From Salpingoeca rosetta (taxonomy: Eukaryota; Protista; Choanoflagellata), in assembly GCA_033442325.1 (NCBI GenBank), contig JAWQFM010000017.1, forward strand, positions 1,206,185 through 1,252,115: a stretch of DNA of 45,931 bases, given 5' to 3'. The position numbers and the translations under genes are program-made. Each line of letters starts with the position of its first letter. Position 1 is the first letter of the stretch. The notes under the pieces were generated by a model. It worked only from the letters and a program-made list of their open reading frames with translations, was not told where the DNA came from and searched no databases. Shown here piece by piece: positions 27,620-31,514 of this stretch.

Positions 27620-30600
27620 ATGAACGCCTTAACGCCAGCCAGCCCACTCCCTGCCACCGCTCCAGCACCTCGCACCACACAGCCATCAGCGCGCGTGGGA
27701 GTTGTCTTCCTTGGAGCGCCGACAGAAGCGCAGTTGGTACGCTCCATAATGGCAGCCAATGACAGTGATGGTCGTGGCCATGGTGGTACCGATGGTAATT
27801 CAACGGGCCGAACTGCGTGGACAAATGGCTGCTGGCGAAGAATAGAGATGGCAATGATGGTGCCGACAAGAGAGCACCTGCTGCTGCAGCAGCAGCAACA
27901 ACAACAACAACAACAACAACAACAACAACAACAGCAGCAGCAGCAGCAGCAGCAGCAGCAGCAGCAGCAGCAGCAGCAGCAGCAATCGCTTGACAGTGAG
28001 GGCAGTTGGTCTGGGACATTTCAGGCGTCACTCCCGCCAACAAACACAAGCACGACAGCACCGCCAACAACTCGCCACTCTGCGCACGTCAGCACGGCCA
28101 CCATCTTTGCTTCTTCTTCGCTTTCTCCAGCCCCATACTCCCCAACACACCACCACCCGCAACCACGGACTGCACCACCACCACCACCACCACCACCACC
28201 ACTGATAAGTTGTGCGCCGTCGCAATCACCGCTTCGCACACGGCCGCTTGTGCGGCGAAGCGATCAAGACCTGTTGTCGCTGCTACTGAAGACACCACAC
28301 CACAGCGAGGGTAGTGACGATGGTGGTGATGATGATGATGACGATGATGATGATGGTGAGCCTCGGTTGTGCTCAGAGCACCGGTACAAGCGCGCCCGAT
28401 TTGAAGCAGCAGCACAACCAGGAAACACCAGCACCACTCACGGCGCGAACAACGACCGTAGTGACGATGGTGACGATGATGGTGATGGTGATACTCACGC
28501 TTGTACTGACGATGGTGGGAAAAGCGGTGATGGCCGTGGGGATCCCAGCGGATCAAGTGCTGTGAAGTGGCTCCATGGGCCAGCACGCCAGCCGGACTGG
28601 AGATCCACTTCCCTGACGCAACTGTGTGACATCACCACTCTTTCTTCGTCTTCGTCTTCGGCTTCGCTGTGGTTCGTCGGCGCGATCGTTTCTGCTGTGG
28701 TGAGTAAACAGAGTGGCACATGGAGCTCCTTGTTTGCACGTCATCGTCTCCAACACAAGGCACACACGCGCACACACGCACGCACTCACACACACACACA
28801 CACACACACACACACACACACACACACACTCTCTCTCTCTCTCTCTCTCTCTCTCTCTCTCTCTCTCTCTCTCTCACTCACACGCCCACTCGACTCACAT
28901 ACGCCCTCCTGCCACGACCACTGTCATTAGCTGCGCCCACGCTGCATACACACGCGTGACGGGCGGGACGTACAGCTGCTGACAATCACAATCACCGATC
29001 AGACAACTACGGAGGACGTGTGCGTGTGTTTGTGGGACCAGTGGTGCTCGCGCCTCGCTCATGTTCGCCCAGGCCACGTGGTATGAGCCCAGTCTGTCTA
29101 TTTGTGTGTGTGTGTGTGTGTGTGTGTGTGTGTGTGTGTGTGTGCGTGCGTGCGTGTGTGAGTGTGTGCGTGTGAGTGTGTCCAATTGCTCATCCCTGCT
29201 ACCAAGCCCCCCCCAACACACCACCACCACCACCACCCTCACCACTGCAGGTACTGTTGCGTGGTTTTCGTGTGCGCGAGTACCAGGGAGCGCTTCAGCT
29301 CTCATCGTGTGCGCAGTCATCAGTGCTCGCCTTTCACCCGTCCAGCACGCCACCGCGCCACTCCCTCGGCACACTGCCAGGTACGGTGATGGTGCATGGC
29401 TTTGCAGCTGCTGGTTCCGCTTGCACTTTTGTTATTGTTCGGTCACAGCACTGGGTACACGGGCAAGCATACATTCATATGATCGCGCACACGCATTCAC
29501 GAGAGCGAGAGTGCAATGCCTCACCTGATATGTGTGTGTGTGTGTGCTTTCAATGCTCGTTCACACATCGTACATGCGTGTACTTACTTGTGGCTCGTGC
29601 CACAGGTGTGTACACACGCGTGCGTGCGCTGGCACAATGGTCGCTACACGCGCTCGCCCACCTCTACAGCTCGCCCAGCACGCGCCATTGCAGCCCCAGT
29701 CGAAACAGAAGCACATGGCGAAGTGGCGGACCGAACGGCGGTGGTGATGGTGGCGGAATGGGTGCGGGTGTGTCGTCGGTGCAGCGCGCGATTTCGACTC
29801 CCGGCTGCCATCGCATTATCGGCCGCATCGTGCACACCACGTGAGTCCATATGGGGTTATGTTTGAGCGTGTGTGTGTGTGTGTGTGTGTGTGTGTGTGT
29901 GTGTGTGTGTGTGTGTGTGTGTGTGTGTGTGTGTGTGTGTGTGTGTGTGTGTGTGTGTGTGTGTGTGTGTGTGTGTGTGTGTGTGATACACACCTCATCA
30001 CAGCGTCATCCTCATTTGCACACATGTACATTTGCAGCATTCAGCGCCTCCCTGGCGATGGCGATGACGATGACAACAACACACCGCTTCACGTCCCAGC
30101 GCCATCAACATCATCAACATCAACATCATTGGCATCGACAGCGTTGTCGTCACCATTACCACCACCACTGTCTCCTCCTCCTCCCCCCTGCGTTCGATTT
30201 GGATGTCTGCGGTGTGGGCGTGTGCAGCCACGTGTCGACACCAGCACGGCCGTCTGCTCCGTCTGCATCACCCGGTGTGTACACATGTGTGTCCAGGTCG
30301 TGGGAGCGACGGAGACAAATGTGCCTGTCTATGCGTCAGTGTGTGTGAGTCTGTCTGCCTGTCTGCCTGTGTGTGTGTGTGTGTGTGTGTATGTCTGCGT
30401 GTCTGCCTGTCTGTGTGTATGTGTCTTCCTGTCTGTCTCTGTGTACACCTGTCTGTGCTGATGCACAATCACATCCTGCCTGCGTCCCAATTAACTCATT
30501 CTTCCAACCACCCCCTCCCCCGCCCTTCTCTCTTTTCAACAGTGGCGGGAGTCAGGATGGCCTTGCGCACGGCTGGCTGTTGCCATCAGTGATTGCACAC

Positions 30601-31514
30601 GTGCACGATGTGGCGGATCCGTCCACACACGCGCGCATCCTCATGCCACGTGTCATCGCAACAAAGGTGTGCCGAGTCACCATGCTGGTGTGGTTGGTGG
30701 TGTGGTTGCTTGTGGTTGCGTGTTTGTTTGCTTGCTCGCTGTGTTTGTCTGTTTGTGTGACTGTGCGCTTGCTTGTGTGACTGTGCGCTTGCTTGTGTGC
30801 TTGGTTGCGTTTGTGTCGGTTTGAATTGCCATCATCACATACGAGCACTCACGCTGGCCCTGTGTGAGACGCAGCTGTTCCTCCTCCGTGCGTCCACGTG
30901 CACACGCGCATACGCACAGGAAACACTTGGGTGAGTCGTTGGCATGTGTGCCTGTGTGCGTGCGTGCGTGCGCGTGCTTTTGTGTCCATCTGTCACTCCC
31001 CTCTATTTCTCACTGCTCGTCTGTCTACGGCACGGTCACAGGGCCATTCAGCGCAATGCACAGAACACATTTCTCGACATTGCTATCACATGCAGGTCTC
31101 CTCAACGGTACGAGCACGCACACACGTACACACACACGTACACACACACACACACACACACGTACACACACGTACACGCATGTGTTTCCTGGATCTTATC
31201 ATTGTGTGCTCGTTTATGTCAGGTTCAACACCACCACTCACGATCGCGTGCGTGTGTGTGTGTGTGTGTGTGTGTGTGTGTGTGTGTGTGTGTGTGTGTG
31301 TGTGTGTGTGTGTGTGTGTGTGTGTGTGTGTGTGTGTAGGGATCTCGCACCGGCATCTCAGCAAACGACGACAACGACGACAACGACGACAACGACGACA
31401 ACGACGAACGCGACAACAGCAACGGCAACAGCGGCGCCCCGCTCGTCATCGTCGCATGTTCTTGTTGCACTCGATGCGACGCGACTCGAGTTTGCACCAC
31501 CGCCTGCACCGTGA
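27620..31514 (+). CDS. SHLD2/FAM35A (shieldin subunit 2)-like ssDNA-binding protein: N-terminal VFLGAP motif, long disordered polyQ region, OB fold, and C-terminal OB with C4 zinc ribbon; 9 exons
   Basis: Exons 27620(or 27575)-28699, 28931-29080, 29251-29380, 29606-29840, 30038-30274, 30543-30666, 30875-30930, 31042-31107 and 31340-31514, all phase-compatible. OB fold: FVGAIVSAV-LRPRCIHTRDGRDVQLLTITITDQT..VCLWDQW..VRPGHVVLLRGFRVREYQGALQLSSCAQSSV. Zinc ribbon: GCLRCG..CSVC. N-terminus: VGVVFLGAP..CWRRIEM. Confidence 0.7.

What the first reader, a model, noticed from the sequence alone, without database searches (positions are those of the whole stretch)
27620..31514. Shieldin-2 (SHLD2/FAM35A)-like gene in an apparently unicellular, non-vertebrate genome
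Seen: the N-terminal VGVVFLGAP..CWRRIEM motif is followed by a ~300-aa disordered polyQ/acidic linker. Next comes an OB fold (VQLLTITITDQT..VCLWDQW..PGHVVLLRGF..LQLSSCAQSSV), then a C-terminal OB region with GCLRCG..CSVC followed by LLPSVIAHVHD..ARILMPRVIATKLFLLRASTC. Established, recalled from memory: human SHLD2 begins with a VHIFWGAP..WKKIQL segment that binds REV7/SHLD3. It then has a long disordered region and RPA/POT1-like OB folds with YSGCAKCG..CFSC followed by RPALMTAIDG..VESKLIEKILLNISADC. Shieldin was first presented as a vertebrate innovation. Inference: the same order of motifs, including the partner-binding N-terminus, points to an ancient REV7-linked end-protection module. It seems to have one OB fold fewer than the human protein, and it lies tail-to-tail with DSCC1.
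Basis: partly seen in the sequence, partly recalled or inferred. Interest (0 to 1): 0.85.

Follow-up and report, generated by a model that had tools for sequence, protein, structure and literature searches.

The report
Expressed shieldin-2-like OB-fold gene
A real, transcribed eight-exon gene in a small non-vertebrate (probably choanoflagellate) genome encodes a single-stranded-DNA-binding-type protein built like vertebrate shieldin subunit 2. My sequence tests cannot tell whether it is a true SHLD2 orthologue or another old relative of replication protein A.

Summary
**Observation: confirmed.** RNA reads and spliced contigs support a + strand gene of eight exons (CDS 27575-31514, 743 aa). The transcript includes the VFLGAP codons. 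Dcc1 lies tail-to-tail.

**Interpretation: partly supported.**
- The joined first OB fold passes Pfam's cut-off for SHLD2_OB1 (30.3 bits).
- It equally passes the cut-off for the RPA70 DBD-B family REPA_OB_2 (31.8 bits).
- The genome's own RPA1 and chimpanzee SHLD2 each hit only their own family, so this protein sits between the two.
- The C-terminal part has a CxxC-x13-CxxC zinc ribbon with a GCxRCG motif. Chimpanzee SHLD2 has the same pattern; the genome's own RPA1 has Cx4C.
- The C-terminal part gives no Pfam hit. It is only marginally closer to SHLD2_C (p 0.01-0.05) than to RPA1 DBD-C (p 0.13-0.2).
- The N-terminal motif lines up with the human SHLD2 residues that contact REV7 and SHLD3. 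The alignment is not significant on its own (p 0.07-0.23).
- Canonical RPA1 and a REV7 gene lie elsewhere in the genome.
- No SHLD1 or SHLD3 was found, but those searches were insensitive.

**Verdict.** It is an RPA-type OB-fold protein with SHLD2-like architecture. I put SHLD2 orthology at about 0.45.

The parts
27376..27574 (+). Transcribed 5' leader, with a short in-frame upstream ORF and a (TTG)n tract
   Evidence: RNA depth rises at about 27386, and contigs start at 27376. An in-frame stop lies upstream of ATG 27575.
27575..28699 (+). Exon 1 (aa 1-375): N-terminal module, low-complexity linker and first strand of OB1
   Evidence: Continuous ORF. RNA coverage with no internal joints. Donor at 28699|28931 seen in 42 reads and 2 contigs. 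A minor donor at 28671 (18 reads) would shift the frame.
27626..27652 (+). ALTPASPLP: fits the loose REV7 seat-belt motif (two hydrophobics, x, P, four residues, P). Speculative.
   Evidence: Read from the sequence. The motif definition is from PMC7181697. It lies in a Pro/Ala-rich stretch, so a chance match is likely.
27695..27721 (+). VGVVFLGAP: the strongest hydrophobic island of the N-terminal 360 aa. It aligns with human SHLD2 I9-F10-W11-G12-A13-P14.
   Evidence: MAFFT and Smith-Waterman alignments. Human sequence from PDB 6KTO_D. Contact residues from PMC7181697 and PMC7923543. Hydropathy scan.
27833..27850 (+). WRRIEM: aligns with human SHLD2 W36-K37-K38-I39-Q40-L41 (strand beta2)
   Evidence: K37, I39 and L41 are contact residues. 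The loop between the two motifs is 37 aa here and 21 aa in human.
27887..28657 (+). Low-complexity linker rich in Q, S, P, D and T, including Q33 (27887-27985) and D9 (28328-28354)
   Evidence: Composition and hydropathy. Pfam gives only low-complexity noise here.
28664..29334 (+). First OB fold (aa 364-453), spread over the exon 1 tail, exon 2 and exon 3
   Evidence: Joined 94 aa: REPA_OB_2 31.8 bits, SHLD2_OB1 30.3 bits, POT1 18.3 bits. Exon 2 alone: SHLD2_OB1 is the only hit. Atlas neighbours of exon 2 are generic OB folds.
28931..29080 (+). Exon 2 (aa 376-425)
   Evidence: Junctions seen in reads and contigs.
29251..29380 (+). Exon 3 (aa 426-468)
   Evidence: Junction 29380|29606 seen in 114 reads. 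Junction 29080|29251 seen in contigs.
29606..29840 (+). Exon 4 (aa 469-547): predicted helix VYTRVRALAQWSLHALAHLY, a Gly-rich stretch, then CHRIIGRIVHTT, the likely first strand of the last OB
   Evidence: RNA junctions. No Pfam hit, and OB_SHLD2_2nd is not found.
30038..30274 (+). Exon 5 (aa 548-625): acidic and Ser/Pro insert, then the zinc ribbon (C603, C606, C620, C623; 30204-30266)
   Evidence: Reads leaving 29840 continue with the exon 5 sequence. Cys spacing read from the sequence.
30543..30666 (+). Exon 6 (aa 626-667): WLLPSVIAHVHD...ARILMPRVIATK
   Evidence: GT..AG and frame. Length arithmetic of the 1328-nt spliced contig.
30875..30930 (+). Exon 7 (aa 668-686): LFLLRASTCTRAYAQETLG
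   Evidence: GT..AG and frame. Contig arithmetic.
31340..31514 (+). Exon 8 (aa 687-743 plus stop): T14 tract, then HVLVALDATRLEF, which may form the last strands
   Evidence: GT..AG and frame. The contig ends 26 nt into this exon, where the ACG/ACA repeat starts.
31847..34598 (-). Neighbouring Dcc1 (DSCC1) gene, tail-to-tail. It is context, not part of the gene.
   Evidence: Pfam Dcc1 on three - strand ORF pieces.

Best explanation
**Shown.** The locus is a single-copy, constitutively transcribed gene for a 743-aa protein. From N to C terminus it has:
- a short hydrophobic N-terminal module;
- a long low-complexity linker;
- an RPA-type OB fold;
- a helix and linker;
- a C-terminal region with a four-cysteine zinc ribbon of the CxxC...CxxC kind.

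It is not the genome's RPA1, which lies on another contig.

**Inferred.** It is the choanoflagellate counterpart (orthologue or sister lineage) of vertebrate SHLD2. On this reading:
- the OB folds bind single-stranded DNA at resected or stalled ends;
- the long disordered linker acts as a tether;
- the N-terminal strands (VGVVFLGAP, WRRIEM) dock as an added beta-sheet onto REV7, with or without a SHLD3-like partner.

This would link an end-bound ssDNA binder to REV7 and its polymerase partners and limit resection. The middle OB of vertebrate SHLD2 is absent here. That could be the ancestral state or a loss.
For: - **Gene model and expression:**
- **Family cut-off:** SHLD2_OB1 scores above Pfam's cut-off on the joined OB (30.3 vs 26 bits).
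- **Sub-windows:** SHLD2_OB1 is the sole hit of exon 2 and the top or only hit in two shifted sub-windows.
- **Calibration:** the genome's own RPA1 DBD-B exon (49.5 bits to REPA_OB_2) gives no SHLD2_OB1 hit even at E<=10. The SHLD2_OB1 hit is therefore not a generic RPA cross-hit.
- **Pairwise OB1:** OB1 vs chimpanzee SHLD2 OB1 gives p about 4e-4 against shuffles.
- **Zinc ribbon:** G-C-x-R-C-G with CxxC-x13-CxxC here, GCAKCG with CxxC-x15-CxxC in chimpanzee SHLD2, and CPSDSC (Cx4C) in the own RPA1. PMC6003645 calls the CxxC, CxxC pattern conserved in FAM35A.
- **C-terminal part:** closer to SHLD2_C (p 0.01-0.05) than to own RPA1 DBD-C (p 0.13-0.2).
- **N-terminal motifs:** they fall on the human contact residues I9, F10, W11, K37, I39 and L41, in the same order and at the extreme N-terminus. 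They form the strongest hydrophobic island in the disordered half.
- **Partner and copy number:** a REV7 gene exists in the genome. There is no paralogue of the gene.
Against: - REPA_OB_2 scores as high as SHLD2_OB1 (31.8 bits, above its cut-off of 27). Chimpanzee SHLD2 does not hit REPA_OB_2 at all.
- phmmer ranks the own RPA1 (E 1e-4) above chimpanzee SHLD2 (E 3.6e-3).
- SHLD2_C and OB_SHLD2_2nd are not hit.
- The N-terminal alignment is not significant by shuffling (p 0.23 with standard gaps, 0.065 with soft gaps). Also, 11 to 61 of 522 six-frame segments of the window score as high.
- No SHLD3 FxPWFP motif stands out above the control count, and there is no SHLD1_C hit. Both searches are insensitive.
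- The literature reports no SHLD2 outside vertebrates. Orthology would therefore need loss or extreme divergence in most invertebrates.
- Only primate SHLD2 sequences could be fetched, so all comparisons are effectively against one sequence.
Confidence: 0.45

Rival explanations
1. It is an old RPA1-derived OB-fold protein that is not orthologous to SHLD2. It could be a member of, or an analogue of, the 'disordered N-terminus plus C-terminal OB folds with zinc ribbon' class (SPIDR, MEIOB, RADX, HROB), or an unnamed holozoan lineage. It would bind ssDNA in recombination or replication-stress pathways. The resemblance of its N-terminus to SHLD2 would be chance.
For: - REPA_OB_2 scores 31.8 bits, above its cut-off and the top hit.
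- phmmer prefers the own RPA1 DBD-B.
- Smith-Waterman scores against RPA1 DBD-B and SHLD2 OB1 are equal.
- The N-terminal alignment is not significant.
- There is no SHLD2_C hit.
- PMC11377751 describes several such IDR-plus-OB proteins with a terminal zinc ribbon.
- The literature finds no SHLD2 outside vertebrates.
Against: - No Pfam family of SPIDR, HROB, CTC1 or Rep_fac-A_C appears at E<=10 for any piece.
- A true RPA1 DBD-B does not cross-hit SHLD2_OB1.
- The first cysteine pair is CxxC, not Cx4C.
- The gene is expressed in every RNA run laid, which does not fit a meiosis-only factor such as MEIOB.
- Similarity to the own RPA1 is low, about 25% over one OB, so it is not a recent duplicate.
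Confidence: 0.4
2. It is a telomere-end or CST-type OB protein (a POT1-like or CTC1-like large subunit). Its terminal OBs resemble RPA70 DBD-B/C, and it would act at telomeric overhangs rather than at breaks.
For: There is a weak Pfam POT1 hit on the first OB (18.3 and 17.4 bits). From general knowledge, CTC1's last OB carries a zinc ribbon and CTC1 is too divergent for easy detection.
Against: The POT1 score is below its cut-off of 29 and well below the other two families. No CTC1 (PF15489) hit was listed. POT1 and CTC1 start with OB folds, not with a 360-aa disordered region.
Confidence: 0.08
3. It is not a functional protein-coding gene: a chance ORF chain, a pseudogene or non-coding transcription.
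For: The sequence is repeat-rich with microsatellite introns. The protein is absent from the two protein collections searched.
Against: Seven canonical introns keep one 743-codon frame open. Stranded RNA reads and spliced contigs from several studies support it. A domain hit above curated cut-offs appears only after splicing.
Confidence: 0.02

Closest known systems
Vertebrate SHLD2 (FAM35A); Pfam SHLD2_OB1 / OB_SHLD2_2nd / SHLD2_C. Compared with chimpanzee isoform P0039 and human residues 1-52 of PDB 6KTO_D.
   Same: The order of parts is the same: N-terminal hydrophobic strands, a long disordered half, then C-terminal OB folds with a CxxC...CxxC zinc ribbon containing G-C-x-[KR]-C-G. The first OB passes the SHLD2_OB1 cut-off. 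The N-terminal motifs fall on REV7/SHLD3 contact positions.
   Different: There is no detectable second OB. SHLD2_C is not hit. The first OB also passes REPA_OB_2, which chimpanzee SHLD2 does not. The loop between the two N-terminal motifs is 16 aa longer. Low-complexity inserts sit inside the last OB. The protein is 743 aa against 835-904 aa. The host is a unicellular non-vertebrate.
RPA70/RPA1 DNA-binding domains B and C (Pfam REPA_OB_2, Rep_fac-A_C). The genome's own copy is at G000 C2:406-409 kb.
   Same: The first OB scores 31.8 bits to REPA_OB_2 and aligns with the own DBD-B (p 4e-4). An OB is followed by a zinc-ribbon OB, as in DBD-B/DBD-C.
   Different: There is no Rep-A_N domain, no DBD-A and no Rep_fac-A_C hit. 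The first cysteine pair is CxxC rather than Cx4C. A 360-aa disordered N-terminus replaces the N-terminal OBs. The canonical RPA1 is a separate gene.
Other 'disordered N-terminus plus C-terminal OB' repair proteins: SPIDR, HROB, MEIOB, RADX (PMC11377751)
   Same: They share the general architecture and a terminal zinc-ribbon OB. Their likely role is ssDNA binding in repair.
   Different: None of their Pfam families was hit. MEIOB and RADX lack the long N-terminal disordered region. No sequences of these families could be fetched for a direct comparison.
Cryptococcus neoformans Njf1, a Rev7/Rif1/Rev3-associated NHEJ factor (PMC11526942)
   Same: It would be a second non-vertebrate case of a REV7-linked, shieldin-like end-joining factor, if the REV7 link holds here.
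   Different: Njf1 is defined by function and is reported to have no detectable relatives outside basidiomycetes. For the present gene, nothing functional is known.

Membership tests
SHLD2 (shieldin subunit 2) | First OB fold matches Pfam SHLD2_OB1 at or above the curated cut-off (26 bits) | tested here: met
   30.3 bits, E 3.8e-7, profile 43-114 of 138, on the joined 94-aa domain. Sub-windows gave 25.1, 16.2 and 14.9 bits. REPA_OB_2 scores 31.8 bits on the same residues, so the hit is not exclusive.
SHLD2 (shieldin subunit 2) | Second OB fold (Pfam OB_SHLD2_2nd) | tested here: not met
   Exon 4 and the exon 3-4 stretch give no hit. Only about 80 aa of helix and Gly-rich linker lie between the two OBs.
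SHLD2 (shieldin subunit 2) | C-terminal domain matches Pfam SHLD2_C (cut-off 27 bits) | tested here: not met
   Exons 5, 6 and 8 alone and a joined 99-aa stretch from the zinc ribbon to exon 8 give no hit. The six-frame genome search was blank but insensitive. Pairwise similarity to chimpanzee SHLD2_C is only marginal (p 0.01-0.05).
SHLD2 (shieldin subunit 2) | Four-Cys zinc ribbon of the CxxC, CxxC type in the last OB (PMC6003645) | tested here: met
   C603-x2-C606-x13-C620-x2-C623 with GCLRCG. Chimpanzee has GCAKCG...CFSC. The own RPA1 has Cx4C.
SHLD2 (shieldin subunit 2) | N-terminal strands that bind O-REV7 and SHLD3 (human residues 1-50) | tested here: inconclusive
   The motifs align on I9, F10, W11, GAP, W36, K37, K38, I39, Q40 and L41. 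The alignment score is reached by 6.5-23% of shuffles, and PDB phmmer finds nothing. Binding was not tested.
SHLD2 (shieldin subunit 2) | Long disordered N-terminal half before the OB folds | tested here: met
   Residues about 99-360 are rich in Q, S, P, D and T, with no domain hit.
SHLD2 (shieldin subunit 2) | Reciprocal best match to SHLD2 rather than to another OB family | tested here: inconclusive
SHLD2 (shieldin subunit 2) | Partners SHLD1 and SHLD3 present in the same genome | tested here: inconclusive
   A six-frame search with SHLD1_C was blank. The FxPWFP scan gave 2 hits against 3 and 6 in the control, neither in a convincing ORF. The same kind of search found only one HORMA exon, so blanks mean little. 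REV7 itself is present.
RPA1 (RPA70) | REPA_OB_2 (DBD-B) at or above the cut-off of 27 bits | tested here: met
   31.8 bits, profile 17-94 of 98.
RPA1 (RPA70) | Rep_fac-A_C (DBD-C) with a Cx4C...CxxC zinc ribbon, and the N-terminal OBs (Rep-A_N, DBD-A) | tested here: not met
   No Rep_fac-A_C hit on any piece. The first pair is CxxC. The N-terminus is disordered. The genome's real RPA1 (103.6 + 60.1 bits to Rep_fac-A_C) is at C2:406-409 kb.
POT1 / CTC1 | POT1 OB (cut-off 29 bits) or the CTC1 family model | tested here: not met
   POT1 scores 18.3 and 17.4 bits. CTC1 was not listed in any scan.

The most novel reading that the evidence does not exclude
The core of shieldin predates animals. This would be a true SHLD2 orthologue in a unicellular relative of animals, with two OB folds. 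Its N-terminus alone would carry the REV7-docking strands and perhaps also a seat-belt motif (ALTPASPLP), so it would join REV7 without SHLD3. On this reading, vertebrate SHLD1, SHLD3 and the third OB are later additions. 'Not detectable outside vertebrates' would then reflect fast sequence divergence rather than absence, and it would tie in with the Rev7-bound Njf1 pathway of Cryptococcus.
Probability: 0.35. Interest if true: 0.85.

Novelty: new member of a known kind. Interest (0 to 1): 0.62.

Why it matters
Three papers read here state that shieldin subunits other than REV7 are confined to vertebrates or not detectable outside them (PMC6003645, PMC11526942, PMC11616998). If SHLD2 has a bona fide relative in a choanoflagellate, several things follow:
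- The REV7-coupled ssDNA-binding arm of the 53BP1 pathway would date to before animals.
- It would give a minimal two-OB version for structural work.
- It would offer a unicellular organism in which to test what shieldin did originally. From my own knowledge, if this is Salpingoeca rosetta, transfection and CRISPR editing exist for it.

Even if it is not an orthologue, it is an unannotated RPA-like repair protein that sits in sequence between RPA70 DBD-B and SHLD2 OB1. That is informative about how SHLD2 arose from RPA.

Tried and rejected
**Searches that gave nothing or were insensitive**
- Word-indexed searches with exon 1 regions 45-133 and 335-404 found nothing, not even the protein itself.
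- phmmer of exon 3 + stop-free intron 3 + exon 4 against 1.84 billion representatives gave 0 hits. The protein is therefore not in the collections, and no protein id for the spliced product could be obtained.
- Six-frame own-genome searches with SHLD2_C, SHLD2_OB1 and SHLD1_C were blank. The same method finds only one HORMA exon, a HORMAD-like gene, so these blanks are uninformative.
- PDB phmmer with the N-terminus and with exon 2 found nothing. The PDB holds no SHLD2 OB structure, so a fold search could not have separated SHLD2 from RPA.
- Pfam on the exon 1 tail and on the N-terminus alone found nothing.
- The Atlas search with exon 2 returned only generic OB folds.
- The FxPWFP scan for SHLD3 gave two hits, fewer than the control.
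- The apparent paralogue at C9:306220 is a (TG)n artefact inside a USP39-like gene.

**Steps that could not be run**
- REV7 complex prediction was not sent. The REV7 gene has at least four exons, so it has no single reference, and human REV7 is not on offer.
I laid the part beside it as the tool suggested.

- The spliced 743-aa protein has no reference.
- I also typed the 52-aa human SHLD2 N-terminus, which one search confirmed letter for letter against PDB 6KTO_D.

**Hits I left alone**
- In one search I used the chimpanzee entry P0039.
- The human entry P0018, the 82-aa metagenome fragment P0004 carrying SHLD2_C, and the Logan entry P0022 may be human-derived. I did not fetch, compare or follow them.

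
Full report
**What is there**

The window is part of contig C17 of a 55.4-Mb, 68-contig genome. Its genes have many short introns full of (CA)n and (GT)n tracts. From size, GC content and gene structure I take it for a choanoflagellate. 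That is my inference; the organism name is coded in the tools.

Three-frame translation and splice-site reading of 27400-31700 give one + strand gene of eight exons, all with GT..AG introns:

| Exon | Coordinates |
|---|---|
| 1 | 27575-28699 |
| 2 | 28931-29080 |
| 3 | 29251-29380 |
| 4 | 29606-29840 |
| 5 | 30038-30274 |
| 6 | 30543-30666 |
| 7 | 30875-30930 |
| 8 | 31340-31514 |

- The product is 743 aa from the first ATG after the upstream in-frame stop.

**Expression and splicing**

Stranded RNA reads from two runs and contigs from two further runs were laid on 27300-29868.

- The transcript is on the + strand.
- Depth begins at about 27386 and runs through exon 1, including the VFLGAP codons (27695-27721). 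There are no joints inside exon 1.
- Junction 28699|28931 is seen in 42 reads and two contigs.
- Junction 29380|29606 is seen in 114 reads.
- Junction 29080|29251 is seen in spliced contigs.
- Reads that leave 29840 continue with the first 30 nt of exon 5.
- A 1328-nt spliced contig carries 443 nt beyond exon 4. That equals exon 5 + exon 6 + exon 7 + 26 nt of exon 8, where a repeat begins. Exons 5-8 are thus supported indirectly.
- A minor donor at 28671 (18 reads) would shift the frame.

**Surroundings**

- Exon 2 has no paralogue in the genome. The one other hit is a (TG)n artefact inside a USP39-like gene.

**Anatomy of the protein**

- aa 1-98 hold the only strong hydrophobic islands of the first 360 residues: PSARVGVVFLGAPTE...AQLVRSIMAAN and WRRIEMAMMV.
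- aa 99-360 are low-complexity (Q33, D9, Pro and Ser runs).
- aa 364-453 form an OB fold: SLWFVGAIVSAV, VQLLTITITDQT, VCVCLWDQW, GHVVLLRGFRVREYQ, LQLSS...SSVLAF.
- aa 470-489 look helical.
- aa 536-743 contain, in order:
  - a strand (CHRIIGRIVHTT);
  - a 45-aa acidic and Ser/Pro insert;
  - a zinc ribbon, C603-x2-C606-x13-C620-x2-C623;
  - WLLPSVIAHVHD;
  - ARILMPRVIATKLFLLRASTC;
  - a T14 insert;
  - HVLVALDATRLEF.

**Homology tests on the first OB fold**

The spliced protein is not in either protein collection. It has no reference, so pieces were searched apart as the operators advise. Four single-domain stretches of 90-99 aa were typed.

| Query | SHLD2_OB1 | REPA_OB_2 | POT1 |
|---|---|---|---|
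| Exon 2 alone | 16.2 bits (E 0.0085), the only hit | none | none |
| Joined OB1, 94 aa | 30.3 bits (cut-off 26) | 31.8 bits (cut-off 27) | 18.3 bits |
| Shifted window towards the C-terminus | 25.1 bits | 23.8 bits | 17.4 bits |
| Shifted window towards the N-terminus | 14.9 bits | none | none |

Calibration against bona fide members:
- The genome's own RPA1 was located at C2:406-409 kb (REPA_OB_2 48.4 bits; Rep_fac-A_C 103.6 + 60.1 bits). Its DBD-B exon hits only REPA_OB_2.
- Chimpanzee SHLD2 (P0039) came from a search seeded with the human N-terminus, which had first been verified against PDB 6KTO_D. It hits only SHLD2_OB1, OB_SHLD2_2nd and SHLD2_C.
- The two families therefore do not normally cross-hit. 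The window's OB lies between them.

Pairwise tests agree:
- Smith-Waterman against shuffles gives p about 4e-4 both to chimpanzee OB1 and to the own RPA1 DBD-B.
- phmmer slightly prefers the own RPA1 (1e-4 vs 3.6e-3).

**C-terminal domain**

- No Pfam family is hit, neither SHLD2_C nor Rep_fac-A_C.
- The zinc ribbon is of the CxxC, CxxC type. PMC6003645 describes this type as conserved in FAM35A.
- The motif is GCLRCG here and GCAKCG in chimpanzee. The own RPA1 has CPSDSC, that is Cx4C.
- The 91-aa stretch from the ribbon onward is marginally similar to chimpanzee SHLD2_C (p 0.01-0.05) and not to the own RPA1 DBD-C (p 0.13-0.2).
- This leans towards SHLD2 but is weak.

**N-terminus**

- Two structure papers name the human SHLD2 residues that pack against O-REV7 and SHLD3: V7, H8, I9, F10, W11, K37, I39, L41, Y43, L48 and L50.
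- Both MAFFT and Smith-Waterman put VFLGAP on IFWGAP and WRRIEM on WKKIQL. The connecting loop is 16 aa longer here.
- The score is not unusual, however. 23% of shuffles reach it with standard gaps and 6.5% with soft gaps, as do 11 to 61 of 522 six-frame segments of the window.
- The match is in the right place and on the right residues, but on its own it is no more than a lead.
- ALTPASPLP, 15 aa upstream, fits the loose REV7 seat-belt pattern. It sits in a Pro/Ala-rich stretch, so I treat it as speculation.

**Partners**

- A REV7 gene exists at C21, about 564.8-566.3 kb. It has the YP..F.KR, PVERFIFDI, PWIVADQQD and LSILVYAEE blocks, in at least four exons.
- Searches for SHLD1 and SHLD3 were blank or at control level. 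They were insensitive.
- No complex prediction could be sent, because REV7 has no single reference.

**Literature**

[quoted passage not shown] That paper also describes a functional, Rev7-bound shieldin-like factor in Cryptococcus.
- PMC11616998 says much the same.
- PMC11377751 points out a class of repair proteins with a disordered N-terminus and C-terminal OB folds ending in a zinc ribbon: SHLD2, SPIDR, HROB, MEIOB and RADX. This defines the main rival.

**Verdict**

- The protein is certainly an RPA-type OB-fold protein distinct from RPA1, with the overall build of SHLD2.
- For SHLD2 orthology:
  - the SHLD2_OB1 hit is above cut-off and is not a generic RPA cross-hit;
  - the zinc ribbon is of the CxxC type with the GCx[KR]CG motif;
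  - the C-terminal part leans marginally towards SHLD2_C;
  - the N-terminal motifs are in the right position;
  - the N-terminal half is long and disordered.
- Against SHLD2 orthology:
  - REPA_OB_2 scores equally or slightly better;
  - SHLD2_C and the second OB are absent;
  - the N-terminal match is not significant;
  - the family's reported range is vertebrate-only.
- I put orthology, or sister-lineage status, at about 0.45. An unrelated old RPA-like lineage gets about 0.40.
- The decisive computations need the whole spliced protein, which these tools could not take. They are full-length profile-profile search, fold comparison with SHLD2 models, multimer prediction with REV7, and a search for orthologues in other holozoans.

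Noticed in passing
window 27520-27574: RNA reads from two runs carry a longer (CTG)n(TTG)n tract just before 27551 than the assembly's (TTG)6. This looks like a repeat-length difference in the 5' leader between the sequenced culture and the assembly (17 and 40 reads with loose ends).
   Followed up: no
window 28671|28931: A minor alternative donor lies 28 nt upstream of the main one (18 of 60 junction reads). It would shift the frame before the OB fold, so it may be an unproductive isoform.
   Followed up: partly
window 29381-29605: Intron 3 is 225 nt, a multiple of three, and has no in-frame stop. Retaining it would insert 75 aa without breaking the frame. Reads show it is spliced out; residual depth is 0.4-15 against 50-100 in the exons.
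   Followed up: partly
window 19500-20264 and 23649-24248 (+): ORFs made of repeated GAFGAKPSPFG / SPFGQKPGG units look like the FG repeats of a nucleoporin.
   Followed up: no
window 754-1908 (-): A 384-aa ORF carries HGGGF and GDSAGG motifs, typical of an alpha/beta-hydrolase (lipase/esterase type).
   Followed up: no
window 35771-36430: A run of N (an assembly gap) lies inside microsatellite-rich sequence.
   Followed up: no
L007 (G000 C21:563410-566598), + strand, about 1462-3140: This is a REV7 (MAD2L2)-like gene in at least four exons. It has a long acidic and polyQ insert of about 85 aa between the PWIVADQQD block and the last two strands, that is, inside the seat-belt region.
   Followed up: partly
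L001 (G000 C31:476468-479620), - strand, around 1501-1653: The only HORMA exon found by the six-frame Pfam search reads like a HORMAD/Hop1-type protein (VAVSSIAYLRNMFPNSAFGDR), not REV7 or MAD2.
   Followed up: no
L004-L006 (G000 C2:406126-410529), + strand: This is the canonical RPA1 gene in many exons. Its DBD-C zinc ribbon reads CPSDSC...CEKC.
   Followed up: partly
hits P0004 and P0022: An 82-aa protein from a JGI metagenome contig carries SHLD2_C, and a 669-aa Logan protein carries SHLD2 domains. Both are probably vertebrate, possibly human, DNA or RNA in those samples.
   Followed up: no
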